A DNA stretch of 64,000 nt from Macrostomum lignano (lineage: Eukaryota). A model generated the notes under the pieces. That model did not search any database and was not told where the DNA came from. It was given only the letters and a program-made list of their open reading frames with translations. The DNA is taken from contig NIVC01000640.1 in NCBI GenBank assembly GCA_002269645.1, positions 434,001-498,000 of the forward strand. Direction: 5' to 3'. Both the position numbers and the translations under genes were made by a program. Shown here in pieces: positions 6,376 through 62,495 of the stretch. Every line of letters starts with the position of its first letter. Position 1 is the stretch's first letter.

Positions 6376-6418
6376 CGTCCCGCCCCGTCCTACACAGCCA
6401 GCAACTCCCATCCCGCAG

Positions 6419-11466: not shown

Positions 11467-25061
<13,595 letters not shown>

Positions 25062-37805: not shown

Positions 37806-39488
37806 GCAAACCCGTAGCAGACAGACTGGGGATACTGAAGCGCAAGCATGAAATTGTGATTGAATGGCATGTGAAGCTGTGAGTCCTCAGCTACAGAGGC
37901 AAACCGAGGCGAAGGAATTATCTATTAAAATCTAGAAACTAGAAAAACCCGCATATTTTGCTACTCAAAGTAGCAGAAAAAGAGTTATTTCACACTCTAA
38001 CTAGCTAAATATTGCTTTAAAAGGTGAGACGCTTGAAAATGAAGTCAAGCCAGTCTTAATTTGCATCTAAGCTATTGCAATAAATTCAGAGAGAAAGCTC
38101 AATTGACTTTCTGCCTTGCGTCTGACCTAAAAAATGCGCCTCTTTGTCCGCTTGCATTTCTGCATTTTCAGTCTCAATCAAGCGGTCGCAGGTTGAATAG
38201 TGTCGAGTGTGGGAGAGGGCGAGTGAGGGCTCAAGGCTCCGTTCGGATTGTCTCAAATTACAGCAACATTCGGCCGCGTGTCAGGCTGGGCAGTCTTGCA
38301 TTCGAAATTAGTTTGAATTCGAACTAATTGGTCGCCTCTGGCCCTCTTGATTTCCTGTAGCCTTTTGCAATGCTATTTTAGGATATTATAAGCATCATAT
38401 TGTTGTCTGACTGTCTGAAACTTCAATAACACATTTTTAAATTAACAGCTTAACTAGCAGATTATATTATAAGTTCGATCGGTAACGCAGCACTCGACTA
38501 GCACAGCAACTGACTTGCTGGCAGATCTCGGTCGCAATCCTTGCCCACCAGCCCCTGGCTGAAACTGCGCAGTCCCCAAAGTTGTTGTTGGTGCAGCGCC
38601 CTCTGTTTTCGTTAAAGCCGAATTGCTCTTCGCTACAAACCAGCCGATTCCCAGGCAGCAGAAGCAGCAGCAGTAATTGAATACAGTAAAAAAAGAAGCA
38701 GAAAAAGTTTCAGACCCCCCAAGTAAAGAAGTGAGAGGTGGAGAACCAGAGAAAAGCAGCACTTGCCCGCCGCGGAGAGCCCGAAAAGCTGTGCAAAGCC
38801 CCCGTCTCCACCGGACTGGAACCAGCCGAACGGAAATGAAAGAAGAAACAAAGCCAAGGAAGAAGAAGAAGAAGAAAACGCATATAAATAGGCGTCAGTT
38901 TTAGAGACGACCAGGCGAGAGCGGCGGCGGCGGAGGCGCGCATTCCGAGGACAGCTTGGCGAGCTGACTGTCTGCAGATGGTGAGAGCACCGGCTATAGT
39001 TGTAGAGTTGAACCCGAAGGGGAGCTGCTTGAACTGACACACCGCCTGACAGCACTGTGTCATGGAGCTGCTCTCTTGCTGGTTCCTCTTCTGTCTTCAG
39101 GCCAACCCGCAGTTCTCTGATCCCAGTTCGCATGGTACAAATAAACTACCTTTTGCATGCTCAGCATGTTTTAAAATTGCCTTTTCGATTTGTCTTTTTT
39201 ATTTGTGTGTAATTGAGAGGGGCGCAGATACAACTGGGAAAGGGAGGAAAATATTTACAGTATAGCAAGTGATTGTCACTAAAAAGTTAATCTCCTCGGG
39301 CATTATACGAGCGATAAGAAAGTGTTTGATTATTGAATAGGTTAGTGTAAAAGGTGACACCGCAGGTGCACTGCATGATTTAAAACAATTTTACATACAC
39401 ATGGAGCAATCCGCCATTAGCTTTGCTACATAATCTAAGTGAGTTACCAGTAGCACACAGCCGGAGGCTGAGAAAGATACATGAAAGC

Positions 39489-42400
39489 TCAAATGGCCCA
39501 CCAGCGACATCCGTCGCCAGACATGGTCACTGTTGCCGCCTCGCCGTCGTCGCCTTCGCCTTCACCGTCGCTGTCCGGTCCACTAGAAAACTGGGCATCG
39601 GCTTCGTCTCTGCCCTTGTACTCAAAGCTGGCGCTTCTGTCTTCTTGTCTCTCACTGCCCGAGCTCCAGCTGCCAACAAATCCAGTTTCGATGCTCCCGG
39701 CTTTGCTGCTACCGACAAATCCTGCTGGATCCTTGTCTGATCCGTCTTGCATCTCGTTGCTGCTCGATTCTTTATTGCATCGCTCTTTGATCTTGCCGAC
39801 ATTGTCGTTGAGCTCACCAGTTGTGGATTGCTTGCCGCTGGCCAGGGTGACTGCCGCGCTCTCTTCGTTGTCCAGCTCGGCCAGGAATTGCTCGACTTTG
39901 CTCCGGCCCAGAATGCGAGCGCAGTCAAGCGCCGTGAGGTCCCAGCGATCGCGCAGGCGTCGGTCGACGCGGCAGACGCTGCAGAGGAACTGAACAGCGG
40001 CCAGGCGGCCCTCCGACGCGGCCACGTGTAGAGGGGTGCGGCTGTCGTAGTCACAGGAGTTTATGTCGTGGCCCTGTGACGGAGTGGACAGCACTGTCAA
40101 TGTTAGCCTTCAGCCAAATTCCCCTCATGGAATTCCCTTCATGGAACTCCCACACGGAACTCCCACATGGAATTCCCCACATGGAATTCCCTTCATAAAA
40201 TTTTCTTCATGGAATTCCCCTCATCGAATTCCCCTTATGGAATTCCCCTAATGGAATTCCTCTAATGGAACTCCCCTCACCGAATTCCCCTCACCGAATT
40301 CCCCTCACCGAATTCCCCTCACCGAATTCCCCTCACCGAATTCCCCTCACCGAATTCCCCTCACCGAATTCCCCTCACCGAATTCCCCTCACCGAATTCC
40401 CCTCACCGAATTCCCCTCACCGAATCCCCCTCACCGAATTCCCCTCACCGAATTCCCCTCTCCGAATTCCCCTCACCGAATTCCCCTCTCCGAATTCCCC
40501 TCACCGAATTCCCCTCACAGAATTCCCCTCACCGAATTCCCCTCACAAAATTCCCCTCACCGAATTCCCCTCACAAAATTCCCCTCACAGAATTCCCCTC
40601 ACAGAATTCCCCTCACCGAATTCCCCTCACAGAATTCCCCTCACAGAATTCCCCTCACCGAATGCCGAATTCCCCTCACCGAATGCCGAATTCCCCTCAC
40701 CGAATGCCGAATTCCCCATTCTTCACTTCTAGGCATACCCAGACTGAATCCCCCGCTAGCTCCTCACCGTCAAGTAGAACCGCCGCAGGCAGGCGATGTC
40801 GCCGTCTCTAGCCGCGTACAGCATGGTGGAGACAGCGTCGAACCTGGCTCTGCCCGAGTCGGCCAGCCGGCCAGTCGGGTCCAGCTTCCTGTTGTGCAGC
40901 AGCGAGTCGTACAGGTGAAAGCTGTACTGCCGCACCAGCAGCTCGCAGAAGTGCAGCGACCTGGCGGACACGCGGCCCTGCAGCAGCCGCGGGGAGTACA
41001 GGCAGAGGCCCATGACATTCGGCAGCACAGCCAAGAGGCAGCCGCTGACGCCCGCGGTGGCCGGTAAGCCGCATTTGAAGGCGAATCGGCCAGAGTGCCG
41101 GCCAAGCCCGCAGCTGTGCATCACCGACAGGGTGCTGCGGGTGGCAGCCGGGCTGAGCACCCGGTCCTCGGTCAGGGGGCAGACTCCGCCGTTAGCCAGG
41201 GCAGCCGCGATCAGGGCCCCGGCCTTGAATTGGAGAATTGGGGATCGGGTCTGCTTGACTCCATTGTGCTTGATTGGCCCATTCTTTGCACTCTCCACAC
41301 CCCTAATTTCCAACTTCATTTTCCTCTTTGTCTTCCTCTCTGTCTCCCCCTCTCTGTCTCCCTACTCTCTCTCTCCCCTCTTTGTCTCCCTTTCTCTCTG
41401 TCTCCCCTCTCTGTCTCCCTTTCTCTCTGTCTCCCACTCTGTCTCCCACTCTCTGTCTCCCACTCTCTGTCTCCCACTCTCTGTCTCCCACTCTCTGTCT
41501 CCCTTTCTCTCTGTCTCCCCCCTCTCTGTCTCCCCCTCTCTGTCTCCCCCCCTCTCTGTCTCCCACTCTGTCTCCCACTCTCTGTCCCTTGCCTCACTCC
41601 ACCTCACAACCTCTCGCCTCATGTGTTATCTCCGGTAGTATTAGTGAACTGATTTTAGAAATTTGGCGAATGCATTCTACACAAATTCGCCGAATAGGTA
41701 AATAAGTAGTCAAAACGAGCATGAGTTATATAATTTCTCTACGTTAGCAAAACCTAACAAAATCCGCACCTGACAGTCAATAGAGAAGGACGCCAACTGC
41801 AGGTGCAAATCCATGGCGTCTGCAGCCTGTGCACCGGGCGGGAAGGCGCCCAGCTCCATCAGGCGGTAGGCGGCAGCCCAGTTGTGATAATTGGCCTCCC
41901 GCTGCGACAGGTACGAGCCCGTGTGCACCGACACGGAGCCTCCGGCCAGCAGGCGGCTGTAGACACGGCACAGGGCGGAGAACCGAGCGGAGAGCGGGTC
42001 CTGCGGCGAGCCGATCAGGGCGGCGGTGAGCAGCGCGCCGGAGCCCGTCAGCGGGTTGAATGGCTTGCCATCCGGACCGATCTCTAAGCCTTCGTGGTGT
42101 ACACCTGTTTGGATTCACCATTCTCTCATGCTGTCATTCTGTTGTAATTTTGCAAATCTGTAATGCTGACATTCTGTTATTCAGCCATTCTGCCATTCTG
42201 CCATTCTGCCATTCTGCCATTCTGCCATTTTGCCATTCTACCATTTTGCCATTTTGCCATATTGCCATTTTGCCATTCGGCCATTTTGCCATTCTGCCAT
42301 TTTGCTATTCTGTCACTCTGCTATTCTGCCATTCTGCCATTCTGCTATTTTGCCATTCTGCCATTTTTATATTTTTCAGTTTTCTATTCTGCCATTCTGC

Positions 42401-45400
42401 CATTTTGCCATTCTGCCATTCTGCCATTCTGCTATTCTGCCATTCTGCCATTCTGCCATTCTGCCATTTTGCCATATTGCCATATTGCCATTCGGCCATT
42501 TTGCCATTCTGCCATTTTGCCATTCTGCCATTCTGCCATTCTGCTATTCTGCCATTCTGCCATTCTGCCATTCTGCCATTTTGCCATATTGCCATTTTGC
42601 CATTCGGCCATTTTGCCATTCTGCCATTTTGCTATTCTGTCACTCTGCTATTCTGCCATTCTGCCATTCTGCTATTTTGCCATTCTGCCATTTTTATATT
42701 TTTCAGTTTTCTATTCTGCCATTCTGCCATTTTGCCATTCTGCCATTCTGCCATTCTGCTATTCTGCCATTCTGCCATTCTGCCATTCTGCCATTCTGCC
42801 ATTTTGCCATTCTGCCATTCTGCTATTCTGCCATTCTGCTATTCTGCCATTCTGCCATTCTGCCATTTTGCCATTCTTTCATGCCGTCATTCCGTCATTC
42901 TGCAGCAGAAATGAATGAACAATTGCTCACCAACTGGCTCATAGCCAACAAATTGGTGCACAACAACCGGTCCCTTCTCCGTCAGCGCCACAGCATAGAT
43001 GATTGGCTGGCTGCAGTCCTGCAGGCAGAAGGCCGCTCGAGAATCGCCAAGCGACAGCCGCTGACCGTCCACGGTGCACAGCGAGATGCCCCACAAGTCG
43101 GGGTCGGCCTGGGTGAGCTCTGGGGTCAGGCAGCTCACCTCACCGACGTTACACTCTTGCCGCGCTTGCCTGAGCGGGTGGATTAAGTGCATTATCGCTT
43201 GCTGGCCCAGTCACCGGAAGCTAGTGTCACAATGGAAGCTGCTGTCACAATGGAAGCTAGTGTCACAATGGAAGCTAGTGTCACAATGGAAGCTAGTGCC
43301 ACAGTGGAAGCTGCTGTCACAATGGAAGCTAGTGTCACAGTGTAAGCTAGTGTCACAATGGAAGCTAGTGTCACAGTGGAAGCTAGTGTCACAGTGGAAG
43401 CTAGTGTCACAGTGGAAGCTAGTGTCACAGTGGAAGCTAGTGTCACAATAGAAGCTAGTGACACAATGGAAGCTGCTGTCACAATAGAAGCTAGTGTCAC
43501 AATGGAAGCTAGTGTCACAGTGGAAGCTAGTGTCACAATAGAAGCTAGTGACACAATGGAAGCTGCTGTCACAATAGAAGCTAGTGTCACAATGGAAGCT
43601 AGTGTCACAATGGAAGCTAGTGTCCCAATGGAAGCTAGTGTCACAATGGAAGCTAGTGTCACAGTGGAAGCTGCTGTCACAATGGAAGCTGCTGTCACAA
43701 TGGAAGCTAGTGTCACAATGGAAGCTTATGTCACAATGGAAGCTAGTGTCACAATGGAAGCTAGTGTCACAATGGAAGTTAGTGTCCCAAAGGAAGCTAG
43801 TGTCACAATGGAAGCTAGTGTCACAATGGAAGCTGCTGTCACAATGGAAGCTAGTGTCACAATGGAAGCTAGTGTCACAATGGAAGCTAGTGTCACAATG
43901 GAAGCTAGTGTCACAATGGAAGCTGCTGTCACAATGGAAGCTAGTGTCACAATGAAAGCTAGTGTTCCAATGGAAGCTTGTGTCACAATGGAAGCTAGTG
44001 TCACAATGGAAGCTAGTGTCACAGTGGAAGCTATTGTCACAATGGAAGCTTATGTCACAATGGAAGCTAGTGTCACAGTGGAAGCTGCTGTCACAATGGA
44101 AGCTGCTGTCCCAATGGAAGCTAGTGTCCCCATGGAAGCTAGTGTCACAATGGAAGCTTATGTCACAATGGAAGCTAGTGTCACAATGGAAGCTAGTGTC
44201 ACAATGGAAGCTAGTGTCACAATGGAAGCTAGTGTCACAATGGAAGCTAGTGTCACAATGGAATCTAGTGTCACAATGGAAGCTAGTGTCACAATGGAAG
44301 CTAGTGTCACAGTGTAAGCTAGTGTCACAATGGAAGCTAGTGTCACAGTGGAAGCTAGTGTCACAGTGGAAGCTAGTGTCACAATAGAAGCTAGTGACAC
44401 AATGGAAGCTGCTGTCACAATAGAAGCTAGTGTCACAATGGAAGCTAGTGTCACAATGGAAGCTAGTGTCCCAATGGAAGCTAGTGTCACAATGGAAGCT
44501 AGTGTCACAGTGGAAGCTGCTGTCACAATGGAAGCTGCTGTCACAATGGAAGCTAGTGTCACAATGGAAGCTTATGTCACAATGGAAGCTAGTGTCACAA
44601 TGGAAGCTAGTGTCACAATGGAAGTTAGTGTCCCAATGGAAGCTAGTGTCACAATGGAAGCTAGTGTCACAATGGAAGCTAGTGTCACAATGGAAGCTGC
44701 TGTCACAATGGAAGCTAGTGTCACAATGGAAGCTAGTGTCACAATGGAAGCTAGTGTCACAATGGAAGCTAGTGTCACAATGGAAGCTGCTGTCACAATG
44801 GAAGCTAGTGTCACAATGAAAGCTAGTGTTCCAATGGAAGCTTGTGTCACAATGGAAGCTAGTGTCACAATGGAAGCTAGTGTCACAGTGGAAGCTAGTG
44901 TCACAATGGAAGCTTATGTCACAATGGAAGCTAGTGTCACAGTGGAAGCTGCTGTCACAATGGAAGCTGCTGTCCCAATGGAAGCTAGTGTCCCCATGGA
45001 AGCTAGTGTCACAATGGAAGCTTATGTCACAATGGAAGCTAGTGTCACAATGGAAGCTTGTGTCACAATGGAAGCTAGTGTCACAATGGAAGCTAGTGTC
45101 ACAATGGAAGCTTGTGTCACAATGGAAGCTTATGTCACAATGGAAGCTAGTGTCCTGGTATCATACCGAAAGCTTCGGTTTCAAGCCAGGGACCACTGTA
45201 GTATAACAGGACGAAAAACTAAAAAATCGTGTCCTGAAAAAATACACTGCGGAGATAGGGAAAAATCGTTTTTTCATCACAACATAAATGATTGCACTTT
45301 CTCTGGGGCAGTGAAGATGACTATTTCTTAAATTTATTATGCACAGCATGTAAATCTGTTGCATTTTACATATAAGGGGTTATAGACAAGTGGATAGGGT

Positions 45401-46738
45401 TTCGGACACATGACTGAAAGTTCGGGAGTTCGATTCCCGATCCCACTGGAACAATTTGTGTCCTTGAGTAAGACACTTAACTCTGCATTGCTTCAGTTCA
45501 CCCAACTGTAAAATGGGTGCCAGCATTAGCTGGGGTAACTGAGGCTGTGTGTGGCGACCCCCCAGTCCTTGGACTGAACAGCCGTACGCAGCCTTCAGAT
45601 GCGCCGCGCAATAGCTGCGGCTGAGCTGTCGGTTGCACATCTGGCCCAATTGGGACAGGTGTAATCAAATAATGTCAGAAATTTTCACTACACAGCTACA
45701 TAAAATACAACAGAGTAACATGTTTTGCATGCTTAGTTAAAAGAATGTTAATATTCAATGTCCCAGATCAAATGCAATCATTGATTTTGTGATGAGAGAA
45801 TGATTTTTCCCTATCTCCGCAGTGCATTTTTCCACTGCTTGCTATCTGGGGGTGCTTGCTATCTGGGGGATGCTTGCTATCTGGGGGATGCTTGCTATCT
45901 GGGGGGGGGAGTGCTGGCTACCTTGGGGGTGCTTGCTATCTGGGAGGGGGTGCTTGCTATCTGCGGGATGCTTGCTATCTGGGGATGCTTGCTATCTGGG
46001 GGGGTGCTTGCTATCTGGGGGGTGCTTGCTATCTGGGGGGGGGTGCTTGCTATCTGCGGGGTGCTTGCTATCTGGGGGGGGTGCTTGCTATCTGGGGGGG
46101 GGTGCTTGCTATCTGGGGGGGGGGGGTTGCTTGCTATCTGAGGGATGCTTGCTATCTTTTTGTGAAGGCTTTATTTTGTTGTGACCTTTTGTTACTATAG
46201 AAAGAAAGAGCTTTATAGCAAACATCTTTGTCCGTGACAATTTTACTCGAATAAGGTGATTTATAATACTGAAGAAGGAATTTGTTCTTAAGAAAATGTG
46301 CTTTTTAATGGATTTGCATGAATAATTTTTGCTCCTTGCTTATTGGGCGCCCCGAAGGGGGGCACTAGATTGCTAGTCAAATACTAAAAGCAACCAAACA
46401 AAAATTACCACTCACTCAAACAGCATCTCGATAGTCTGCGCAAATCCGACAAAGTCGCGCACAATGAGCTCATTGCGCAGCACCTTGAGCAGAAAGACGC
46501 TGCCAGTGGCCGAGAAGATTCGCTCAACCGACTCTTTGCTGAAGGCGGCCTCGCCCTCATTGTCTGACATTGCGGCCAGCAGCTGCTGCAGGTTGGCCTT
46601 GATGCGCGGGTCCCGCTTGTCGATGCCCTCGGTGCGCAGCCAGGCGGTCAGCTTGGCGGCCCGGATCAGGCCGAGGTCCTCGGCGCTGTAGCGGACAGCC
46701 GAAGGCGCTGCTACCTGCGAGACAGTTTGAGTCTGCAT
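39489..46738 (-). CDS. gls-like: Glutaminase (GLS)-like protein with N-terminal EF-hand-like domain and C-terminal ankyrin repeats, ~645 aa, catalytically degenerate; exons 46738(or 46714)-46416, 43169-42931, 42104-41770, 41223-40768, 40073-39489
   Basis: Collinear GLS motifs: DPRIK, DPDLWGISLCTVDGQR, VGYEP, KPFNP, AAALANGGVCPLT, MHSCG, FAFKCGLPA, LPNVMG, KLDP, DYDSRTPLHVAASEG, RDRW. Introns are GT-AG and phase-consistent (1938 nt from ATG 46738). The true first exon is uncertain. Confidence 0.9.
40110..40715. repeat. 14-bp minisatellite (GAATTCCCCTCACC)n
   Basis: Direct tandem repetition in a gls-like intron. Confidence 0.93.
41335..41590. repeat. TC-rich ~14-bp repeat (CTCTGTCTCCCACT)
   Basis: Low-complexity tandem units in an intron. 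Confidence 0.8.
42170..42885. repeat. 8-bp repeat (CTGCCATT)n
   Basis: Direct tandem repetition in an intron. Confidence 0.93.
43215..45153. repeat. 18-bp minisatellite (GAAGCTAGTGTCACAATG)n
   Basis: Direct tandem repetition in an intron. Confidence 0.96.
45376..45673 (+). mobile_element. tRNA-derived CORE-SINE, copy 2 (full length)
   Basis: Degenerate A box, B box GAGTTCGATTCC, CORE segment, and a 3' tail GCCGTACGCAGCCTTCAGATGCG...CAGGTGTAATCAAATAAT shared with copy 3. Confidence 0.87.
45835..46157. repeat. ~17-bp G-run repeat (GGGGGTGCTTGCTATCT)n
   Basis: Direct tandem repetition with variable G-run length. Confidence 0.9.
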
Positions 46739-47319
46739 TGCTCAGCTTGGGAGAGGAGAAGACAGTTCTGTGCTGTGTCTGTAAAACCGTGCCAGAAAAT
46801 TGATTATATTCTCTTGAGACTGCGTTTGTTTATTGCGTAATGCAAATATTAGCACTATCGCACCACGCACCACGGCTGGGTGAGTGAGTTTCAATTTAAA
46901 CTCAATTAATTGCGTGCAAAGCGCGATGAACCCTAGTTGGGCCCGCCCCCTGAGATGTCTCTGTGATGCAATCTTACAAGAACACAAGAAGGTCATCAAA
47001 ATTTTATAAGCGACGAAGTAAACCTTCGTGAAAGCTAATAACTTCAACGATTCAATATAGAGAAACAGATTTGCTCAAAGTAGCCCCCAGTAGCAACAAG
47101 ATTACATCATAGCCAAGGCCTCAAAACCAACTATAACTTTAAACGCTGCATAGAACGTACAGATTCTCACGCACAGACTGGGTAATTTTTCTAACTCTCC
47201 ACAATGCCCCAATTTCATAATAATTTCGTCAGTAAAGCAATAAAGCTATAACAACTCACACTACTGCCAGTAAGCTTCGCGGGTTAAAGATTCCATTCTT
47301 AGTGTGGTTGAGTCACTTA

Positions 47320-48660: not shown

Positions 48661-51600
48661 TCAGATGTGCCTGTTGGCCAACTCATCGAAAGAATCATCG
48701 CCGAACGCTCGTCTGTTCCGCTGCTGTGAGTGCACAGTGAAGCTGCTCTGCTGCTGCTGCTGCTGCTCGAATGTTCCATCATGAGCAGCCAACTCGAATC
48801 CGGCATCACCCTGCCAAAACTGCTCCTGCGGCTGCTGCTGCTGCTGCCTACTCTGCATTGGCATCGTCTCCTCCTTCTTAGGCATTAGCCGGGCAAAAAA
48901 TCCCGAACGAAGAAAGCTATCAAAGCGACTCTCGTTGAACTGCGATTTCTTTGTTTGGTAGCCCAGGCTCACGAAAAAGAAGCAGAGAATGACAGCAATC
49001 ACCACGAACACGGAGTAGAATATCGGATAGGCGATTGGGTGGATCTTGTTCATCACCTGGAATGGAAGATGGACAGATGCTGTAGTCTGGTGTGCGTGAG
49101 GCCTGAGCCAATCAGGCTGGGGCTGTGATGCTCCACCAAGCTGACAACTACTGTAGTCTGGTGTGCGTGAGGCCTGAACCAATCAGGCTGGGGCTGTGAT
49201 ACTCCACCAAGCTGACAACTACTGTAGTCTGGTGTGCGTGAGGCCTGAGCCAATCAGGCTGGGGCTGTGATGCTCCACCAAGCTGACAACTACTGTAGTC
49301 TGGTGTGCGTGAGGCCTGAGCCAATCAGGCTGGGGCTGTGATACTCCACCAAGCTGACAACTACTGTAGTCTGGTGTGCGTGAGGCCTGAGCCAATCAGG
49401 CTGGGGCTGTGATGCTCCACCAAGCTGACAACTACTGTAGTCTGGTGTGCGTGAGGCCTGAGCCAATCAGGCTGGGGCTGTGATACTCCACCAAGCTGAC
49501 AACTACTGTAGTCTGGTGTGCGTGAGGCCTGAGCCAATCAGGCTGGGGCTGTGATACTCCACCAAGCTGACAACTACTGTAGTCTGGTGTGCGTGAGGCC
49601 TGAGCCAATCAGGCTGGGGCAGCAAGTACCTTGTGTTTGTTCAAAGCTAACTGATGATTTCAAGCAAGCTGAGCCCTTACCGCAGCCATTAGCACGGGCA
49701 GAACAGCTTCGCCAAAGGCTGCGGAGGCAACCAGAGAAGTGGCTCGGTCCCCTGAAAATGTTTATTTTTCGAATTTGCAATTAGCGAAAGCCGCATGTAG
49801 GAGAACAGTCTTACAGCACAAGTTCTACTCCGCCAAAAGACTCACTGGTTACTTGAATGAACTGCTCAGTGAGAGCCAGCAGGGCTGGCATGCAGTGGCT
49901 AATGAAGAAGCCCGTGAGCATGGTGCTCAAGAACAGAACAGCCATACTTTTCTGGCCAATCATAAACAGCGTAGCTGAGAACACAAGTCCAACCTGTTAA
50001 AATTCAAATAAACAGTTTAAATCCAAATTCTCCGGAACCGAATATTTGAGCACGGGCCTCACCAAGTCCAGAAATATTATGTGGACGCTGGACAGGCGAG
50101 CAGTGATGAAGATGCCTAACAGGCGACCAATCAGCGTGAAGCCCTGAAATAAATACATCGTAAAAATTGAGTACTAAGAATTTCCGAAATGGCTTTTATG
50201 GTTATTAATAATGGCGGGAGAGCTGCGAAGACCCTGGCGCAACGCCTTCATCGACATCGTCCCACAACCAGCACTGACGGCGATTCTGCCAGTTCCGCTG
50301 ACTATTGAGCACTGTACTCAGGCACCCCCTTATAGTGGTTAAAGCGTCGGGCTTACAACTTGAAGGTCGGGGGTTCGATTCTCAACCCACTTGGAACAAT
50401 TTTTGCCCTTGTGAGCAAAGACGTGTAACTCTGCATTGCTTCAGTTCACCCAGCTGTAAAATGGGTGCCAGCATTAGCTGGGGTAATTGAGGCTGTGTTT
50501 GGTGACCCCCAGTCCTTGGACTGAACAGCCGTACGCAGCCTTCAGATGCGCCGCGCAATAGCTGCGGCTGAGCTGTCGGTTGCACATCTGGCCATTAAGG
50601 CAGGTGTAATCAATTATTAATTATTAATGGCATGTTGTATCTCTAATAGATAATCGGCTTAGCTTAATAATCCGCTCAGTCGCGGTGGCCGTCTTCAGTA
50701 TATTTGCATACAATTGTCACGCATATAATTGTCTATGGCCAAAGCCGCACAACTAAGGCTGGGAATACACCAACGCTCACACAGGGTGTACATTGGCTCT
50801 GAATGTCTAACCATCAGGCATGTACACCCTCTGTGCCTTGGGGCTGGCCATCAAGGCTGTGCATCGCACGACAACCTCCCTCCCGGGCCAATTTTCGTGT
50901 ACGGAACTCTCTTAGCGCGAGAGTCAGCTGCTCTGGGCCTTCCCGAAATAGCTCTACATCGATTAGCATTTGGGCTGGGTGAGCTCGCTGGGGCAGCTTC
51001 AGCATCAGGGAGGGCAGCCTGCTCTGCTGGATGAAACAAGGCCTCAGCCTTTGATGCTGCCTTCCCGAGAGAAAATCTCACTACGATTTCCCGTTCCATT
51101 TTCTTTCTGAGAAATCCCTCCACTACCCCCTCCCTTAGGAGGGCTGAGTGAGTCTCGAGTTCGCTCCGCCGCTAATCTCTACTGACAGGTCGCTCGGTCG
51201 GGCTCCTCACTTGTGGCTTGGCCCGGGACTACTCACTCGCTTCTCTGCCTCATCATGGGAAAGCTTTTTGCTTCCTCCGCGCCCCCAGAGCTGGCAAGTC
51301 ATCTCTTTCTCCTTCCTCTAGAGGAAGCCAGAGCGATGCACTCCCGCCTACAGGCTGTCGCCTTCCCTGTCAGATCGCGTTGAATGTCTACTATGACGAC
51401 GATAACGATACAAGAACGATATGAGCTATATCACTCACGAACTACAGTGTACTTGAGTCGGATAAAATCGTGTCAGTTATATAGCTAAAAGTTTAGTCAC
51501 CTTTCTCCTTTTCTAGATAGCACAAGTGCAGTTATTTTGAAATACGGCCAAATTAATTGTGCTATAACTTCATATCTTCGACAAGCTTAACCACAACCCT

Positions 51601-54600
51601 AACCCTAACGGAGATATGAAGTGTCGGAGATGTGAAGTGTCGGAGATATGAAGTGTCGGAGATGTGAAGTATCGGAGATGTGAAGTGCCGGAGATATGAA
51701 GTGTCGGAGATGTGAAGTATCGGAGATGTGAAGTGTCGGAGATATGAAGTGTCGGAGATGTGAAGTGTCAGAGATATGAAATGTCGGAGATATGAGGCGT
51801 CAGAGATATGAATTGTCGGAGATATGAGGCGTCGGAGATATGAGGCGTCAGAGATATGAATTGTCGGAGGTATGAAGTGTCGGCTTACCCAGAAGGTGGC
51901 CGGCAGGTAGGCAGCGCGGGCCTCGCTGTCCACAGACTGGACTGAGTGAGTCGAGAACGTGTAGATCAGGCCGCTGAAGGCGCCCTTCAAAGTAATTGAT
52001 TTGGGTGGGCAGCTGCTAGAGTGCTTCGATTACAATAGTGCCTTGAAAACCTACTGGCAAACACTCGATGACTGCCAACTAATTGAACGAGAAGGCCTCT
52101 GTCTATCAGGCTAATAACTTATAAAAAGCTGCAATTCGATCAACTGGAAGATTGGATGTTGTAGAAAAGTGTTGTAGACCCGCAGTTAGCAATTCAGCCA
52201 GCTCGAGAACCCCTGACACAGATACGTGCGCAGCTGGCATGCGCTACGACCGGAGTGTACTGCGGCCCTCGCTTCCACCCCTCCCCCTCATTCGAAAGCT
52301 CGGAATTTCACAAGATAGACATTCATATCATCAACATTTCAAGTTTCAAGTACACCAGCAAAACTTCTTGACGGCGTGAAATTTCGAGTTATTAGGTCTC
52401 ATGGGTGTCAGTGCTCGGACAGGATCCCGTCTGAAATTCCGATGTCAGGAAATCCCGATTAACAGTACATTCCTGCTGTTTTCTAATCGTTTTATTTTAT
52501 ATTACTAGATTTAGATTTAGATAATTAGATTTTAATGGAGTGCAAGAAGGAAAATGATGTTCTGATTGTGACTATTTTTCAAATCCCATTCCAACTTGTC
52601 CCGGGATTCCCATTCCGACTTGTCCCGAGATCCCCGTCCCGAATTGTCCCGAGATCCCGTCCGGAATTTTCTCGAGATCCCGTCCCGACTTGTCCCCAGA
52701 TCCCATCCCGACCTTTCCCGAGATCCCGTCCCGACTTGTCCCCAGATCCCATCCCGACCTTTCCCGAGATCCCGTCCCGACTTGTCCCGAGATCCCCGTC
52801 CCGAATTGTCTCGAGATCCCCGTCCGGAATTTTCTCGAGATCCCCGTCCCGAATTGTCCCGAGATCCCCCGTCCGGAATTTTCTCGAGATCCCGTCCCGA
52901 CCTTTCCCGAGATCCCGTCCCGACTTGTCCCGAGATCCCATTCCGACTTGTCCCCAGTCGCACGGCAAGTCGAGGCACGAACCACTAAAGTAATGCGGCC
53001 GCGACCGGAAGTGCTTGACAAACTCGGGTATAGAAGCTGTCTGCATGGCTACAAAGCATCGGCAACCTACCAGAAGCCCGTCCAGGGTGAAGGCGCAGGC
53101 GGAAGCGAAGGCCAGCACGAGGTAGGCGGAAGGACCCTCTTCGCGTCTGTCTTCCAGCTCATCTGCAATGGGTGCAGCAGTGCGGCATTGAGAATATGCA
53201 TGTAGGCTAACCAATAGTGATATCAATTTTCACGGCAAACTTTCAACCATCGATAACTGTACCTTCTTGTTCGGTGCCACGAGAGACCTCCTGGGTCCAG
53301 CCTTCCTTGTAGGACAGGTAGAACATCGACAGCATGATGGGGATCTGCGGTTGCAATTGAGTTGTGTGTAGATTCTTTCTCATCGGTTAGCATAAAATCT
53401 AGCCTGTTATTTACAACCCGACTTTGTCCCTGTCTCCACCTCACTCATTGTCTCTCTACCTCACTCCCTGTCTCTCCAGCCCACTCCCTGTCTTTCCACC
53501 TCACTAATTGTTTCTCCAGCCCACTCCCTGTCTCTCCACCTCACTCCCTGTCTCTCCACCTCACTCCCTGTCTCTCCACCTCACTCCCTGTCTCTCCAGC
53601 CCACTCTCTATCTTTCCACCTCACTAATTGTTTCTCCATCCCACTCCCTGTCTCTCCACCTCACTCCCTGTCTCTCCACCTCACTCCTTGTCTCTCCACC
53701 TCACTCCCTGTCTCTCCAGCCCACTCCCTGTCTCTCCACCTCACTCCCTGTCTCTCCAGCCCACTCCCTGTCTCTCCACCTCACTCCCTGTCTCTCCACC
53801 CCACTCCCTGTCTCTCCACCTCACTCCGTCTCTCCACCCCACTCTCTGTCTCTCCACCTCACTCCCTGTCTCTCCACCCCACTCTCTATCTTTCCACCTC
53901 ACTCCCTGTCTCTCCAGCCCACTCCCTGTCTCTCCACCTCACTCCCTGTCTCTCCAGCCCACTCCCTATCTTTCCACCTCACTCCTTGTCTCTCCACCTC
54001 ACTCTCTGTCTCTCCACCTCACTCCCTGTCTCTCCACCCCACTCTCTATCTTTCCACCTCACTAACTGTCTCTCCACCCCACTCCCTGTCTCTCCACCTC
54101 ACTCCCTGTCTCTCCAGCCCACTCCCTATCTTTCCACCTCACTCCTTGTCTCTCCACCTCACTCTCTGTCTCTCCACCCCATCTCATTCCAGTCTCCAAG
54201 CCAGCCTCCCTGCGCCCACCTGTAGGACAGCGATGACGTAGAACGGATACCGGACGCGAGACAGCATCTCGCCCAGAGCCGGGTCCCTCTGCACAATGTC
54301 GCTAAGTGACTCGGCAGAGATGGCGGACTCCAGCTCCTCGGGCAGGGAGCAGTTGCTCCACTGGCGGAACAGCGGCTTTGACATGAAGCTGCCGATAATC
54401 AGCGGTGACACCAGCGCGCCGACGCTCTGGCTGAAGAACATCGCCTGCAGGAAGGGCCCGGAGCTGCCCCTGTAGAGAAAGATCATCTGCGTGTTGCAGA
54501 AGAACTCCAGGCAGCCCTCGGCCAGGCCCATCAGGCTGAAGATGAAGGCCATGCTTGGCAGGCTGGTGCAGAAGGTCACCAGCACGAAGCAGGTGGGCAC

Positions 54601-54640
54601 CAGCACGGACACTGCTGTCATCACAAGATTGGCCGGCACC
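48661..54640 (-). CDS. mfsd4-like: MFS transporter, MFSD4/NaGLT1-like, 5'-partial; exons 54640-54220, 53344-53263, 53162-53071, 51984-51889, 50143-50063, 49993-49846, 49751-49681, 49056-48661
   Basis: Multi-TM segments with family-like motifs: GLAEGCLEFFCNTQMIFLY...FLQAMFFSQSVGALVSPLI, DGLL|GAFSGLIYTF, LPATFW|GFTLIGRLLGI, FFISHCMPALLALTE, FGEAVLPVLM. Phase-consistent GT-AG introns; TGA at 48661. N-terminal exons were not found within the window. Confidence 0.82.
49079..49620. repeat. 71-bp minisatellite containing GAGCCAATCAGG
   Basis: About 7.5 near-identical units in the last MFS intron. Confidence 0.95.
50321..50628 (+). mobile_element. tRNA-derived CORE-SINE, copy 3 (full length, ATTA-repeat tail)
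   Basis: A box TAGTGGTTAAAGC, B box GGTTCGATTCT, CORE segment, tail shared with copy 2, ends CAATTATTAATTATTAAT. Confidence 0.87.
51605..51885. repeat. 16-bp repeat (TGAAGTGTCGGAGATR)n
   Basis: Direct tandem repetition next to the donor at 51888. Confidence 0.9.
52575..52955. repeat. Degenerate repeat built from TCCCGAGATCCCGTCCCGACTTG
   Basis: Imperfect tandem units in an intron. Confidence 0.8.
53425..54180. repeat. 20-bp minisatellite (CACTCCCTGTCTCTCCACCT)n
   Basis: Direct tandem repetition in an intron. Confidence 0.92.
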
Positions 54641-54924
54641 CTGGGCATTGGGGAAGGCAAATCATTCGGTAATTAAGTAGGACGGGGACTTTGTTTCTTA
54701 GAAAAATTTTGAAGGCTGGCCGAGAGCAAAAATGGAATTACCAAGATAGATAATTTTCTTCTTGATTTCAATTTGATCGACTTTGCCAGTGTCATTGCGT
54801 CATTGGTTCGTGCACTAAATAAACATTCGCTTCTTTGCCCCAACGTGTCCCAATATCTAAACGGAAAAAGTACTTTTACAACGACTTCGGGTGAGTCCAA
54901 ATACTTCCACAGCGCTACTGCGCG

Positions 54925-55952: not shown

Positions 55953-56984
55953 TGAAGTACTCTGTTATTCCGGCTACTTCCCTGTCAGTCACGTGAGCTG
56001 CCTACTTTGAGCTCTTGGTAGACTCTCCCAGGAAGTCTTCTAGCAATCCTTGGTAGTGTTGGTAGTGCTGCCACCAGCTCGCTCGGATCTTGTCCTTCGG
56101 TGAGGGAGACTCCGGGCTGAGCGAAAGAAACGAGACACGAGAACTCAGCACGTCGTGCAGATTTGACCGTTTGTACCGGTGCACACCTCGTCAGCGGTCC
56201 TGCCGGGCTCAAGTGTGGGGATGAGGAACTGTGCTAGTCTCTGTTAGTTCGGTTGGGATTTAGCACACTCGAGGACACACAGCCGCAGATGGATCAGAAA
56301 TCAGATAGGTTGGCTAAGGCCTAGCGCAAGCTGCGCTGGACTTCCAACAGAGCAGTTATCAGAAGAATTAACGCACAGGTAAACGAGAGGTTTCACAGAG
56401 GGGGGCGGTTGCCAAACAGAGGCACGAGAGGCCCGTACTTATAGGGTAGCGGATCGATTTCACCATACCGTGCAACACCCCATTGCGCCAGAGTGCGCAA
56501 GGCCGCTCTCACTGCCCCCAATCTGGCGTGAATCAGTTCTATTTTTAGAAACAGGCGCGGAACCCTCAATTTGAGAGGCAAGGACGCCATTCCTAATTTA
56601 GAGCCTGACACCCGAGATTGCACAAGGCAGCGCAAGAAAAGGACAGAGCGCCGGGGCACGTGATCCGCTCCCGTACGGCCAGACAGAGAGTACAGCCAGA
56701 ACTGGCTGGACTCGAGCCAAGAGAACGCAGCCACACAAAAAGGGGGAAGGAGACAGACAAAGAATGAAACAAGGACAGGCTGAGCGGAGAAGCTCAGACG
56801 CTGGGAACGCAAACGAACCGGAAAAAGGGGGGGACAAAAGGGAGCGCAGGCAGACAAAAGGACAACGAGGGAGGGAGAGGGAGAGAGGGAGGGAGAGCTG
56901 CGGCCAGCGGCAGCCAACAGCTCAGGAGGGCGCAGGGCACAGCTGACAAAGGGGGCACCTAACACTAAACTAGTGCTCACTTCA
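55953..56984 (-). mobile_element. LTR (1032 bp) of the Gypsy element
   Basis: Perfect 6-bp inverted termini TGAAGT...ACTTCA. Immediately preceded on - by the polypurine tract GAACGGGGAGAG (56996-56985) and followed by the tRNA-Leu PBS. Confidence 0.8.
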
Positions 56985-57553
56985 CTCTCCCCGTTCAAAT
57001 GATGAGGCGGAGTGCAAGCGTAGCCGCTTTATTTAAAACAAACAAGTTAAATTGTACTTTAACAAAATATAAACTTCGGCGTTAATTTGAGTTTAGGCAG
57101 CATAAAGATGGTAGAGATTGTACCTGAAGGATAAGCATAAAATGCATTAGTGTCGGATTAATACCGGCTGACCTGATTGAATGCAAAACGCGGCAATGTT
57201 AAGTAGGCGAGTTTGCTGTTCGAAATGCGGGCTGACGCCCTACTAAATGCCTATAGCCATGATGGGGGCGTCGGCCCACTAATAGAGTAAAACAAAGGAC
57301 GCCTAAATAAGTTGGTGGGATGCCGGGAGTCAAATGGCAGAGCCCGGGAGAAGGCGCATGCGGCGAGAGGAGAAAATAAAATAATGCAGTTGCGCGCGAC
57401 TTGCGCTTGCCTGGAGGGGGCCCTACCCTCTTTAGAGTTCAAAGTAAGGGCCAGGTTCAGCGTGGCATCAAGCAAAGAGGTGGGTGCGTCCTGGCGACGG
57501 CCGACCCAGCGGCGAGCACACCTGTCAGCGTCAAGGCTACCAGATCGGGCGGC

Positions 57554-61303: not shown

Positions 61304-62495
61304 GGAGGTCTACGTCAGCAGTGGCCTCCGAGGTTTTGTCCGGGCGAATCTCCAAGTAACAGCAGTCGGCGTGGGCGTCGCTGCGGAGGGCTGAGGGGTC
61401 AGTGGCCTCCGGGTTGGTGTCCAAACCGGTCTCCAGGCGTTGACTGCAGCGATGGTCGTCGTGCTGAAGGGCTGCTGGCGCGGTGGCCTTCAGGTCTTCG
61501 GCCAGGGCAGTCTTGGCCTCCTTGTTGCGAGTGCGGACCTTCTTCGAAAGGGCTGGTCTTGCAGTGGCCTTCCGGGTGGTGTCCAAGTCCGGCTCCAAGC
61601 TGGTGTCATCATCGTGTCGGGCTGCAGAATCGGGATGCTCAAGCAGCCGGCCGTGCTCAAAGTCGACCGGTGGTGTCTCCGGGCGTCTTGACAGGGCGTC
61701 AGCGTTGGCGTGGTCCTTGCCTTTGCGATGGTGAAGCTGGAAGCGGAACTCGCTCAGTCGCTCAATCCAACGGCCCAAGATGCCTGTGACCTGCGTCTGG
61801 TTCAGCAGCCACAGCAAGGCTCGATGGTCAGAACGAACTTCAAACTTCTTGCCAATTAAATAATGACGGAAATGTCGCATAGCGTCCACGATTGCAAGCA
61901 GCTCTTTCTTCGTGACCGTGTAGCGCTTCTCAGGATCACGAAGTTTCCGGCTAAAGAATGCAATTGGACGCTCGACGCCGTCGGATTGCCGTTGTCCAAG
62001 ACAAGCGCCTATGCGAATGTCTGAGGCATCAGTGTCTAGGACAAACTTCACGTCAGGATCTGAGTTAAACTCAGGCAGAGCGAGAACTTCAGTCGAACAC
62101 AACTTCTTCTTCATCGTGTCGAACGCTACCTGGTGCTCATCAGTCCAATGCTGCCGCAGGCTGCCGATGTCCTTTCGAGTCAGGGCATGCAGCGGCGCAG
62201 CAAATCCAGCGTAGCCGTTGACAAACTTGTGGTAGTAATTGGCGAGGCCTAGGAATTGTCTCAGTTGAGTAACGGACTGTGGCACGGGCCAATCACGGAT
62301 CTGCGCAATCTTGTCCTCACAGGTCTTCAGGCCGTCGGGAGTCACGACGTGGCCTAGATAATGCAGCTCCTTGAGGAACAAATGGCACTTCTTCGGCTTG
62401 ACCTTGAGGTTGGCTGCGATAATCCGCTGGAGTACAGTCCGCAGGTTGTCCAGCTGCTCCTCGAAGGTCACAGAGTGCACCACGATGTCATCCAT
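61236..62495 (-). CDS. RT thumb/connection and RNase H segment of Gypsy pol
   Basis: MDDIVVHS...KPKKC...YLGHVV...LRQFLGLANYY...FVLDTDAS...RPIAFFSRKL...KKELLAIV...SDHRAL...HRKGKDHANADALSR. Confidence 0.9.
   Translation of the reverse strand: MDDIVVHSVTFEEQLDNLRTVLQRIIAANLKVKPKKCHLFLKELHYLGHVVTPDGLKTCEDKIAQIRDWPVPQSVTQLRQFLGLANYYHKFVNGYAGFAAPLHALTRKDIGSLRQHWTDEHQVAFDTMKKKLCSTEVLALPEFNSDPDVKFVLDTDASDIRIGACLGQRQSDGVERPIAFFSRKLRDPEKRYTVTKKELLAIVDAMRHFRHYLIGKKFEVRSDHRALLWLLNQTQVTGILGRWIERLSEFRFQLHHRKGKDHANADALSRRPETPPVDFEHGRLLEHPDSAARHDDDTSLEPDLDTTRKATARPALSKKVRTRNKEAKTALAEDLKATAPAALQHDDHRCSQRLETGLDTNPEATDPSALRSDAHADCCYLEIRPDKTSEATADVDLLDDVQDCGSRNLDAHGPRLRGH

What the first reader, a model, noticed from the sequence alone, without database searches (positions are those of the whole stretch)
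39489..46738. Intact glutaminase-ankyrin gene with nearly the whole catalytic machinery replaced: a pseudo-glutaminase
Seen in sequence: five exons splice in frame with no stops and keep the EF-hand-like, glutaminase and ankyrin domains. Mapped to human GLS numbering (recalled): the SxxK nucleophile motif LQS286CVK289 reads LQDCSQ (Asp codon GAC at 43018-43016, Gln at 43009-43007). Also Y249->L (VSCLTP), N335->G (NPLTGSG), E381->Q (LSQRE), Y414->H (DLHLQ), Y466->G (SCGLG) and PAKSGV->PATAGV; only N388 is retained. Ser->GAC needs two base changes, and the losses are scattered across the active site while scaffold motifs are kept, so sequencing error is unlikely. It also carries a long acidic Ser/Gly/Asp-rich tail. 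Inference: purifying selection on the fold but not on catalysis suggests a scaffold, a metabolite sensor, or a regulator that hetero-oligomerises with the active GLS tetramer. I do not recall a described metazoan pseudo-glutaminase.
Basis: partly seen in the sequence, partly recalled or inferred. Interest (0 to 1): 0.82.

Follow-up and report, generated by a model that had tools for sequence, protein, structure and literature searches.

The report
Catalytically dead glutaminase paralogue in flatworm
This is a real, intact and apparently transcribed gene of the flatworm Macrostomum lignano that keeps the whole shape of the enzyme glutaminase but has lost almost every residue needed for catalysis, so it most likely works by binding rather than by chemistry; such dead glutaminases have not been described in papers, although I found several more in sequence databases.

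Summary
On the minus strand, five GT-AG exons (46738-46416, 43169-42931, 42104-41770, 41223-40768, 40073-39489) give a 645-aa protein. It is identical to GenBank PAA79345 (BOX15_Mlig015753g2, Macrostomum lignano), whose annotation is transcript-based.

Alignment to human GLS confirms every claimed substitution: Y249L, S286D, K289Q, N335G, E381Q, Y414H, Y466G, K481T and S482A. The phosphate/activation-loop residues are also lost.

It is not a decaying pseudogene:
- Three genomic copies are all intact.
- dN/dS between the copies is 0.20-0.29 (8 non-synonymous against 10 synonymous changes, p = 0.005).
- 79 of 102 near-invariant family columns are kept, and the losses are enriched at the active site (p = 2e-4).
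- The N-terminal and ankyrin domains are as conserved as in active flatworm enzymes.
- The predicted fold matches human GAC (TM 0.92).

No orthologue was found outside M. lignano among 1.84 billion representative proteins.

The same search showed that the gene is not unique. Dyad-less glutaminase domains recur independently in a second M. lignano paralogue, in Caligus and Romanomermis, in protist proteins that fuse one active-type and one dead domain, and in one bacterial-looking contig. No paper describing these was found.

The function is inferred, not shown. The most likely reading is a non-catalytic binding or scaffolding protein.

The parts
46416..46738 (-). Exon 1 (codons 1-108, phase-2 donor): start codon and the N-terminal helical, EF-hand-like domain
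   Evidence: GT donor GTGAGT. (EF-hand_14, residues 17-93, 22.2 bits, just under the cut-off). (helices, pLDDT 75-98).
42931..43169 (-). Exon 2: start of the glutaminase domain, with the lid residue L122 (human Y249) and the former Ser-x-x-Lys motif, which now reads D159-C-S-Q162
   Evidence: Codons GAC at 43018-43016 and CAG at 43009-43007.
41770..42104 (-). Exon 3: degenerate activation loop (VHHEGLEIGP), G208 (N335), Q255 (E381), N262 (N388, retained), altered dimer-dimer/phosphate helix, H288 (Y414)
40768..41223 (-). Exon 4: end of the glutaminase domain with G340 (Y466), R341 (D467) and LPATAGV (human LPAKSGV), followed by the linker and the first ankyrin helix
39489..40073 (-). Exon 5: ankyrin repeats (to residue 518), then a 126-residue acidic Ser/Gly-rich tail predicted to be disordered, ending ...CRWWAI and the stop codon
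   Evidence: Ank_2/Ank_4, residues 434-518. (pLDDT below 50 for residues 537-645). (composition).
43170..46415 (-). Intron 1 (3246 bp). It holds an 18-bp satellite of about 108 copies (43216-45154), an 18-bp G-rich array (45836-46120) and an interspersed repeat of about 250 bp (about 45400-45670).
   Evidence: The length differs among the three gene copies (3246, 1524 and 1627 bp).
40074..42930 (-). The stretch from intron 2 to intron 4 (it also contains exons 3 and 4). Introns 2-4 (826, 546 and 694 bp) are each dominated by a different tandem array: an 8-bp unit with 92 copies, a 14-bp CT-rich unit, and a 14-bp unit with 39 copies.

Best explanation
The locus is a functional, non-catalytic paralogue of mitochondrial-type glutaminase (the GLS/GLS2 family, Pfam PF04960) in Macrostomum lignano. 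In other words, it is a pseudoenzyme.

Shown:
- The gene is intact in three genomic copies.
- Its exon model equals a transcript-derived annotation.
- The three-domain architecture is kept (N-terminal helical domain, glutaminase fold, ankyrin repeats).
- The nucleophile Ser286, the general base Lys289, Tyr466, Tyr249 and the residues that hold the substrate's carboxylate and amino groups are replaced.
- The phosphate-binding activation loop is also replaced.

Inferred:
- It cannot hydrolyse glutamine and is not phosphate-activated.
- Selection maintains the fold and especially the two flanking interaction domains. It therefore most likely acts by binding, as a scaffold or adaptor that uses the ankyrin repeats and the new acidic disordered tail. 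This would resemble the catalysis-independent interactions reported for the C-terminal region of human GLS2.
- It arose by duplication inside the flatworm lineage, followed by about two-fold faster evolution confined to the catalytic domain.
For: Identity and architecture.

Catalytic loss:
- Searches show the substitutions.
- The roles of Ser286/Lys289/Tyr466/Tyr249 and of N335, E381 and Y414 as ligand contacts come from PMC4929687. That paper also reports that the Y249A, S286A, K289A and Y466A mutants lose most activity.
- The roles of R317, F318, K320, E325, R387, Y394 and K398 in phosphate activation come from PMC9949068. All of these are changed in this protein.

Not a pseudogene:
- Three copies (window, L001, L002) each have a 1938-nt open frame and GT-AG junctions.
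- dN/dS is 0.20-0.29, from 8 non-synonymous against 10 synonymous changes where 75% non-synonymous would be expected (binomial p = 0.005).
- Exons are 99.1-99.4% identical between copies, against about 97% for the flanks and 90-95% for the introns.
- In a simulation without selection, only 0.7% of runs stay free of stop codons by 20% amino-acid divergence.

Scaffold kept, active site lost:
- 79 of 102 columns that are at least 97% conserved are retained. Eight of 11 active-site columns are changed, against 15 of 91 others (Fisher p = 2e-4).
- Mean identity to active homologues is normal for the N-terminal domain (0.25, against 0.27-0.29 for active flatworm enzymes) and for the ankyrin domain (0.42, against 0.42-0.48). 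It is lowered only in the catalytic domain (0.42, against 0.52-0.56).

Fold: the AlphaFold2 model has pLDDT above 90 for 347 residues, and matches human GAC with a target-normalised TM-score of 0.92-0.93 and an rmsd of about 2 A.

Transcription: the GenBank gene models of assembly Mlig_3_7 are built only from RNA-seq and transcriptome assemblies (PMC5730564), and that model equals mine.

Precedent for non-catalytic roles: the GLS2 C-terminus binds Rac1, and GLS2 stabilises Dicer independently of its enzyme activity (review PMC10705333).
Against: - No direct expression, localisation, binding or activity data were found. Searches of five supplementary data sets for Mlig015753 returned nothing.
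- The dN/dS estimate rests on only 18 substitutions between very recent copies. It ignores transition bias and possible gene conversion.
- No orthologue in another species is available, so long-term constraint since the inactivation cannot be measured.
- The structure prediction used an alignment of canonical enzymes, so it is not independent evidence of fold retention.
- The scaffold/adaptor mechanism is an inference from which domains are conserved, not a result.
Confidence: 0.62

Rival explanations
1. It is a regulatory subunit of the active enzyme. The dead protein would co-assemble with the active M. lignano glutaminase (Mlig006689/Mlig026033) and tune or poison its dimer, tetramer or filament.
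For: - Glutaminases work as dimers, tetramers and filaments (PMC9949068).
- Among 38 two-domain glutaminase proteins recovered here, 30 fuse one canonical domain to one dyad-less domain. These come from Rhodelphis, Aphanomyces invadans, Andalucia godoyi and unnamed metagenomic eukaryotes. This is a Rosetta-stone-type hint that active and dead domains pair.
- Much of the core fold is kept.
Against: - The residues of the canonical dimer-dimer helix and the activation loop are replaced: D386Y, R387H, Y394R, K396M, K398L, R317H, F318H, K320G, E325P.
- The protein lacks the roughly 57 extra N-terminal residues of the active paralogue. Position 108 of this protein aligns with position 165 of P0014. 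Co-localisation is therefore not assured.
- The fused protist dead domains keep most ligand contacts, whereas this protein does not.
- The monomer-monomer interface was not assessed.
Confidence: 0.17
2. It is a small-molecule sensor or binding protein. The remodelled pocket would bind glutamine, glutamate or a new ligand without turnover and pass the signal on through the ankyrin domain or the tail.
For: - The pocket scaffold is kept: Q285, N388, G483, V484 and many structural glycines and prolines.
- The same replacements recur in independent dead homologues. Ser286 to Asp is seen in Caligus, P0332, P0292 and P0377. N335 to Gly, with the motif NPLTGSGALL, is shared with a bacterial-looking protein. 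This could reflect a common new constraint on the pocket.
Against: - Six of the nine side chains that contact the substrate analogue DON are changed (Y249, S286, N335, E381, Y414, Y466; contact list from PMC4929687; changes). This includes both carboxylate contacts.
- The recurrence may simply reflect which replacements the fold tolerates.
Confidence: 0.1
3. It is a young unprocessed pseudogene, or a neutrally drifting duplicate that happens still to be open in this highly duplicated genome.
For: - The M. lignano assembly is highly redundant, with 180 Mb in duplicated blocks (PMC5730564).
- No orthologue is known elsewhere.
- Direct expression data were not found.
- A second dyad-less paralogue (P0306/P0400) is absent from the transcript-based annotation.
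Against: - All three copies keep the frame and all splice sites.
- dN/dS is 0.2-0.3, p = 0.005.
- The branch is long (0.68-0.73 against 0.26-0.34 for the active paralogues) yet has no stop codon. The neutral simulation leaves 0.7% of sequences open at 20% divergence.
- The ankyrin and N-terminal domains are as conserved as in active enzymes.
- The gene model derives from transcripts.
Confidence: 0.07
4. It is an enzyme with new chemistry. Asp159 or another residue would take over as nucleophile or base for a different substrate.
For: Ser to Asp at the nucleophile position recurs in unrelated dead homologues. The pocket backbone (G483, V484) is kept.
Against: The general base Lys289, Tyr466 and Tyr249 are all lost and no obvious replacement triad is present. 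No precedent was found in the literature searches.
Confidence: 0.04

Closest known systems
Human GLS (KGA/GAC) and GLS2, with the active M. lignano glutaminases Mlig006689/Mlig026033 (P0014, P0020) and A0A1I8HF79 (P0504)
   Same: Homologous over the whole length apart from the added tail. The architecture is the same: N-terminal helical domain, PF04960 glutaminase fold and ankyrin repeats. Identity is 37-41%. The predicted core superposes on GAC with TM 0.92. 79 of 102 near-invariant columns are kept.
   Different: The Ser286-Lys289 dyad, Tyr249, Tyr466, N335, E381, Y414, K481 and S482 are replaced, as are the phosphate/activation-loop residues. The N-terminus is shorter. A 126-residue acidic disordered tail has been added. 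The catalytic-domain branch is about twice as long.
Pseudoenzymes in general (dead paralogues of enzymes, such as pseudokinases, PDX1.2 or viral pseudo-glutamine-amidotransferases)
   Same: An enzyme fold is retained under selection while the catalytic residues are lost. The expected mode of action is binding, scaffolding or allosteric control of an active relative (PMC7605207 and PMC6829848, listed).
   Different: Those examples belong to other folds. Class I glutamine amidotransferases and the inactive glutaminase domain of CPS1 are unrelated to the serine-dependent PF04960 fold. No GLS-family example was found in the literature.
Catalysis-independent functions of human GLS2
   Same: The C-terminal, ankyrin-containing region of GLS2 binds Rac1, and GLS2 stabilises Dicer without needing enzyme activity (PMC10705333). 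This shows that the scaffold can act by binding alone.
   Different: GLS2 is still an active enzyme. Here catalysis appears to be abolished altogether, and no partners are known.
Other dyad-less GLS homologues found here: M. lignano A0A1I8IAW9/A0A1I8JE34, Caligus rogercresseyi, Romanomermis culicivorax A0A915LB80, Sphaerothecum destruens, protist proteins that fuse an active and a dead domain, and the bacterial-looking P0214
   Same: Ser286 and/or Lys289 are lost while the fold and usually the ankyrin repeats are kept. Some replacements recur (Ser to Asp or Ala, N335 to Gly, M333 to Leu).
   Different: For most of them the nearest relatives are canonical enzymes of their own taxon, so they are independent events and not orthologues. 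Most keep more of the substrate pocket than this protein does. Only the second M. lignano type may share ancestry with it (58-62% bootstrap support, with a long-branch caveat).

Membership tests
Glutaminase family by descent (Pfam PF04960, GLS/GLS2 type with ankyrin repeats) | Significant profile match over the full glutaminase domain | tested here: met
   PF04960 at residues 117-404, covering profile positions 1-286 of 286, E = 4e-69, 233 bits against a cut-off of 27. E = 3e-114 to human KGA chains.
Glutaminase family by descent (Pfam PF04960, GLS/GLS2 type with ankyrin repeats) | Eukaryotic three-domain architecture: N-terminal EF-hand-like helical domain, glutaminase domain, C-terminal ankyrin repeats | tested here: met
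   Ank_2/Ank_4 at residues 434-518, above their cut-offs. EF-hand_14 scores 22.2 bits, just below its 23.7 cut-off. However, the alignment to human GLS starts at residue 25 and the model shows a confident helical N-terminal domain.
Glutaminase family by descent (Pfam PF04960, GLS/GLS2 type with ankyrin repeats) | Serine-beta-lactamase-like glutaminase fold | tested here: met
   The predicted model matches human and mouse GAC crystal structures with a target-normalised TM-score of 0.91-0.93 and an rmsd of about 2 A over about 400 residues. This is a prediction only, and it was guided by an alignment of canonical enzymes.
Glutaminase as an enzyme (EC 3.5.1.2) | Catalytic dyad Ser286-x-x-Lys289 | tested here: not met
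   The motif reads Asp159-Cys-Ser-Gln162 in all three gene copies. Among the 123 active homologues of the first search, every residue aligned at these two columns is Ser and Lys respectively.
Glutaminase as an enzyme (EC 3.5.1.2) | Substrate-contact residues Y249, Q285, N335, E381, N388, Y414, Y466, V484 (list from PMC4929687) | tested here: not met
   Only Q285, N388 and V484 are kept. The changes are Y249L, N335G, E381Q, Y414H and Y466G.
Glutaminase as an enzyme (EC 3.5.1.2) | Activation loop and phosphate site (R317, F318, K320, E325, R387, Y394, K398) | tested here: not met
   All seven are changed: H, H, G, P, H, R and L. Their roles are from PMC9949068. Several of these positions also vary among active invertebrate enzymes, so this criterion is weaker than the dyad.
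Glutaminase as an enzyme (EC 3.5.1.2) | Hydrolysis of glutamine to glutamate | not testable with these tools
   This needs a recombinant protein assay.
Pseudoenzyme | Homologue of an enzyme that lacks residues essential for catalysis | tested here: met
   Alanine mutants of four of the lost residues lose most activity in human KGA (PMC4929687).
Pseudoenzyme | Maintained by purifying selection (intact frame, dN/dS below 1) | tested here: met
   Three intact copies. dN/dS is 0.20-0.29, p = 0.005 on 18 changes. Exons are more conserved than flanks and introns. This measures only recent constraint among in-genome copies.
Pseudoenzyme | Expressed as RNA and protein | tested here: inconclusive
   The evidence is indirect. 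The identical GenBank model comes from an annotation built solely from RNA-seq and transcript assemblies (PMC5730564). No expression values, in situ data or peptides were found.
Unprocessed pseudogene | Disabling lesions (stop codons, frameshifts, broken splice sites) | tested here: not met
   None in any of the three copies.
Unprocessed pseudogene | Neutral evolution (dN/dS about 1, exons no better conserved than introns) | tested here: not met

The most novel reading that the evidence does not exclude
This gene may be one visible member of a widespread, undescribed class of GLS-family pseudoenzymes. Under this reading, dead glutaminase domains have arisen repeatedly in animals, protists and bacteria, with recurring replacements (Ser286 to Asp or Ala, N335 to Gly). 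They would normally operate as non-catalytic partner or regulatory subunits of an active glutaminase. In many protists the two would be fused in one polypeptide, and in M. lignano they would be encoded separately. If so, glutaminase regulation by dead paralogues would be a general principle rather than a flatworm oddity.
Probability: 0.2. Interest if true: 0.75.

Novelty: new variant of a known kind. Interest (0 to 1): 0.5.

Why it matters
Glutaminase is a central enzyme of nitrogen and neurotransmitter metabolism and a cancer drug target. Its non-catalytic ("moonlighting") roles are debated, because they are hard to separate from catalysis. A naturally dead but selectively maintained paralogue would be a natural separation-of-function allele. 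Whatever it does, it does through the fold, the ankyrin repeats or the tail. M. lignano is transgenic- and RNAi-tractable, so this is testable.

There is also a practical point. UniProt names this protein and several similar ones "glutaminase". That name would inflate metabolic reconstructions.

The survey result, that dyad-less GLS domains recur and are often fused to an active one, suggests a neglected pseudoenzyme class worth a systematic census.

Tried and rejected
1. P0002 (91% identical) looked like a divergent paralogue suitable for dN/dS. Its sequence shows it is the same gene, mis-predicted with frame errors in the older assembly. I used the three GenBank copies instead.

2. I searched for expression or orthogroup data on Mlig015753 in the full text of the library and in the supplements of five M. 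lignano papers. Nothing was found.

3. P0214 shares the 10-residue motif NPLTGSGALL and LPAT with this protein, so I considered it as an orthologue. I rejected that for two reasons. Its contig has Shine-Dalgarno-like sites and tightly packed downstream ankyrin and asparaginase genes. Its nearest relatives are other microbial sequences at 45% identity.

4. The first small NJ tree placed the protein next to trematode enzymes (165 of 200 bootstraps). With broader sampling it moved next to the second dyad-less M. lignano paralogue (58-62 of 100), with all long branches clustering together. I therefore treat its exact origin as unresolved, apart from its sitting among flatworm and other metazoan GLS.

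5. Intron positions are not shared with the active paralogue, which has one intron at a different site. This rules out a retrocopy but says nothing about age.

6. No tRNA or Rfam family was found in the window, and no second glutaminase fragment.

7. The neighbouring MFS transporter was considered as a functional clue (for example a glutamate carrier). Only a faint MFS_1 match exists, so no inference was drawn.

Full report
**1. What is there**

I read the minus strand of 39000-47300 and enumerated the GT/AG junctions that keep a single open frame. I resolved the remaining ambiguity by homology to human GLS. This gives five exons: 46738-46416, 43169-42931, 42104-41770, 41223-40768 and 40073-39489.

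- All junctions are canonical GT-AG.
- Exons are 60-68% G+C and introns 42-53%.
- A TGA lies in frame two codons before the ATG.
- The product has 645 residues and is 100% identical over its whole length to GenBank PAA79345.1, BOX15_Mlig015753g2, of Macrostomum lignano.
- The window is part of contig NIVC01000640.1 of assembly Mlig_3_7.

That assembly's GenBank annotation was built only from RNA-seq (StringTie/TACO) and a de novo transcriptome, with ORFs called by TransDecoder (PMC5730564). The identical model is therefore indirect evidence that the four introns are spliced in vivo.

**2. The substitutions are real**

Pfam finds a full-length glutaminase domain (residues 117-404, E = 4e-69). 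It also finds ankyrin repeats (434-518) and an EF-hand_14 match just under threshold.

The HMMER alignment to full-length human KGA (8gwr_B, native numbering) is gap-poor around every motif. It gives Y249L, S286D, K289Q, N335G, E381Q, Y414H, Y466G, K481T and S482A. Q285, N388, G483 and V484 are retained.

The literature assigns roles to these residues (PMC4929687):
- Ser286-Lys289 is the catalytic dyad.
- Tyr466 takes part in proton transfer.
- N335 and Y414 hold the alpha-carboxylate.
- Q285 and E381 hold the amino group.
- Y249A, S286A, K289A and Y466A lose most activity.

The activation machinery described for GAC and GLS2 filaments is also gone (roles from PMC9949068). That machinery comprises the R317-E325 salt bridge, the F318 lock, and phosphate bound by K320, R387, Y394 and K398.

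Among the 123 active homologues of the first search, every residue aligned at columns 286 and 289 is Ser and Lys respectively. Only the Mlig015753 entries carry different residues there; a few fragmentary models show gaps.

**3. A gene under selection, not a decaying copy**

M. lignano carries three copies (g1, g2 in this window, g3). In each, an MFS-type gene lies immediately upstream.

- All three copies keep the 1938-nt frame and all splice sites.
- Pairwise dN/dS is 0.20-0.29. Across the three copies there are 8 non-synonymous and 10 synonymous changes, where neutrality predicts about 75% non-synonymous (p = 0.005).
- Exons are 99.1-99.4% identical, the 2-kb flanks about 97% and the introns 90-95%.
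- The protein sits on a long branch (0.68-0.73, against 0.26-0.34 for the active M. lignano paralogues) but has no stop codon. In a substitution-only neutral simulation, 0.7% of sequences remain open at 20% amino-acid divergence.

The divergence is patterned:
- Of 102 columns that are at least 97% conserved among active homologues, 79 are kept. The 23 that changed include 8 of 11 active-site columns, against 15 of 91 others (p = 2e-4).
- By domain, identity to active homologues is ordinary for the N-terminal domain and the ankyrin domain. It is reduced only in the catalytic domain.
- An AlphaFold2 model is confident over the three domains and disordered for residues 537-645. Its core superposes on human GAC at TM 0.92 and an rmsd of about 2 A. 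The caveat is that the input alignment was made of canonical enzymes.

**4. Origin and distribution**

Neither the word-indexed searches nor an exhaustive HMMER scan of 1.84 billion representative proteins finds anything above 47% identity outside M. lignano. The gene is therefore either restricted to Macrostomum or its orthologues are not in these databases.

It has four introns, whereas the active paralogue has one at another position. It is therefore not a retrocopy.

NJ trees place it among flatworm and other metazoan glutaminases, but its sister changes with sampling. I regard its age as unresolved.

**5. It is not alone**

Checking the dyad columns in all retrieved proteins revealed many other PF04960 domains without Ser286 and/or Lys289:

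- A second M. lignano type (A0A1I8IAW9 and A0A1I8JE34). It reads MQASQF and has N335G, and the rest of the pocket is kept. It is present only in the older annotation.
- Caligus rogercresseyi: LRDLCK, with E381Q, Y414N, Y466H and K481M.
- Romanomermis culicivorax: K289A and Y466N.
- Sphaerothecum destruens.
- Several metagenomic proteins.
- A bacterial-looking protein, P0214, in an operon-like contig with an ankyrin protein and an asparaginase.

Among 38 two-domain proteins, 30 combine one canonical domain with one dyad-less domain. These come from Rhodelphis, Aphanomyces invadans, Andalucia godoyi and unnamed sources.

For most of the dead proteins examined, the nearest relatives are canonical enzymes of their own group. 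These are therefore repeated, independent inactivations. Some replacements recur, notably Ser to Asp and N335 to Gly.

I found no paper that describes any GLS-family pseudoenzyme. The only "inactive glutaminase" in the literature is the unrelated amidotransferase domain of CPS1.

**6. How it most likely works**

What is shown is loss of the catalytic and activation residues, together with retention and constraint of the fold, the N-terminal domain and the ankyrin repeats.

What is inferred:
- No glutaminase activity and no phosphate control.
- Action by binding, most plausibly through the ankyrin repeats and the new acidic disordered tail. The precedent is the catalysis-independent interactions of the human GLS2 C-terminus with Rac1, and of GLS2 with Dicer (PMC10705333).

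The rivals:
- The hetero-oligomer idea gains indirect support from the protist active-plus-dead fusions. It is weakened by the replaced dimer-dimer helix and activation loop, and by the shorter N-terminus.
- A glutamine or glutamate sensor is unlikely given the lost ligand contacts, although a different ligand is possible.
- Neutral decay and new chemistry are the least supported readings.

**7. Verdict**

The core interpretation, a selectively maintained pseudo-glutaminase, is supported. The specific functional proposals remain untested. The uniqueness claim needs tempering, because similar dead homologues exist in databases even though they are undescribed in the papers I could search.

The finding is a new variant of a known kind: a pseudoenzyme in a family where none has been reported. 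Interest is moderate. It would rise if the recurrent active-plus-dead pairing proves to be a general regulatory principle.

Noticed in passing
window 40117-46120 (introns 1-4 of the gene): Each intron is dominated by a different tandem array: an 18-bp unit with about 108 copies (43216-45154), an 18-bp G-rich unit (45836-46120), an 8-bp unit with 92 copies (42166-42903), and 14-bp units (41335-41586 and 40117-40663). Intron lengths differ among the three gene copies; intron 1 is 3246, 1524 and 1627 bp.
   Followed up: partly
window about 45400-45670; also 50363-50613 and 2609-2794: An interspersed repeat of about 250 bp (90-91% identical copies) lies in intron 1, in the neighbouring MFS gene and far upstream in the window. 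ARAGORN and Rfam call no tRNA or RNA family in it.
   Followed up: partly
window about 48661-54648 (minus strand): The upstream neighbour is a 464-aa gene with a faint MFS_1 match. The same neighbour precedes all three copies of the dead glutaminase (L001, L002, L004), so the duplication was segmental or genome-wide.
   Followed up: partly
window about 56190-62500 (minus strand): LTR-retrotransposon pol remnants: reverse transcriptase/RNase H (61236-62495) and integrase (ORF 57554-61303).
   Followed up: partly
window 14557-22833: A block of about 8 kb has very long overlapping ORFs in several frames on both strands and only low-complexity Pfam hits (Cornifin, PEP_C). It looks like a large coding-like tandem repeat or a low-complexity gene.
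   Followed up: no
window 6096-7154 (+): A 352-aa ORF with a LIM-domain match (E = 6e-6).
   Followed up: no
proteins P0306 and P0400 (UniRef A0A1I8IAW9, A0A1I8JE34; M. lignano, not in this window): This is a second kind of dyad-less glutaminase paralogue in the same species: S286A, K289F and N335G, with the rest of the pocket kept. It is found only in the older assembly's annotation, and no DNA was obtainable. It is possibly a sister of the gene studied here (58-62% bootstrap support, with a long-branch caveat).
   Followed up: partly
proteins P0369/P0398 (Caligus rogercresseyi), P0293 (Romanomermis culicivorax), P0295 (Sphaerothecum destruens), P0332 (JGI metagenome): These are independent GLS homologues that lack Ser286 and/or Lys289. 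Ser to Asp recurs. Where a source names them (Romanomermis in UniRef), the name is "glutaminase"; the others carry only transcript identifiers or no name.
   Followed up: partly
proteins P0003, P0004, P0005, P0247, P0248, P0251 and others (Rhodelphis marinus, Aphanomyces invadans XP_008864740, Andalucia godoyi, metagenomes): These are two-domain glutaminase proteins. 30 of 38 pair one canonical domain with one dyad-less domain, 6 have two canonical domains and 2 have two degenerate domains.
   Followed up: partly
L005 1-2808 (Logan SRR22388054): A bacterial-looking contig carries a dyad-less EF-hand/glutaminase/ankyrin protein (663-2222, RETAE in place of QSCVK). An AGGAG-preceded 100-aa ankyrin protein follows, and then the start of an asparaginase-like gene (MSKPTRIYVLNTGGTLGM). 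The protein shares the exact 10-mer NPLTGSGALL with the flatworm protein, apparently by convergence.
   Followed up: partly
protein P0014 / L003 3001-5502 (active M. lignano paralogue): The presumably active paralogue has Cys at the lid position Y249, so this residue is not universally required (6% of the active homologues in the alignment also have Cys here). Its gene has a single intron, against four in the dead paralogue.
   Followed up: partly
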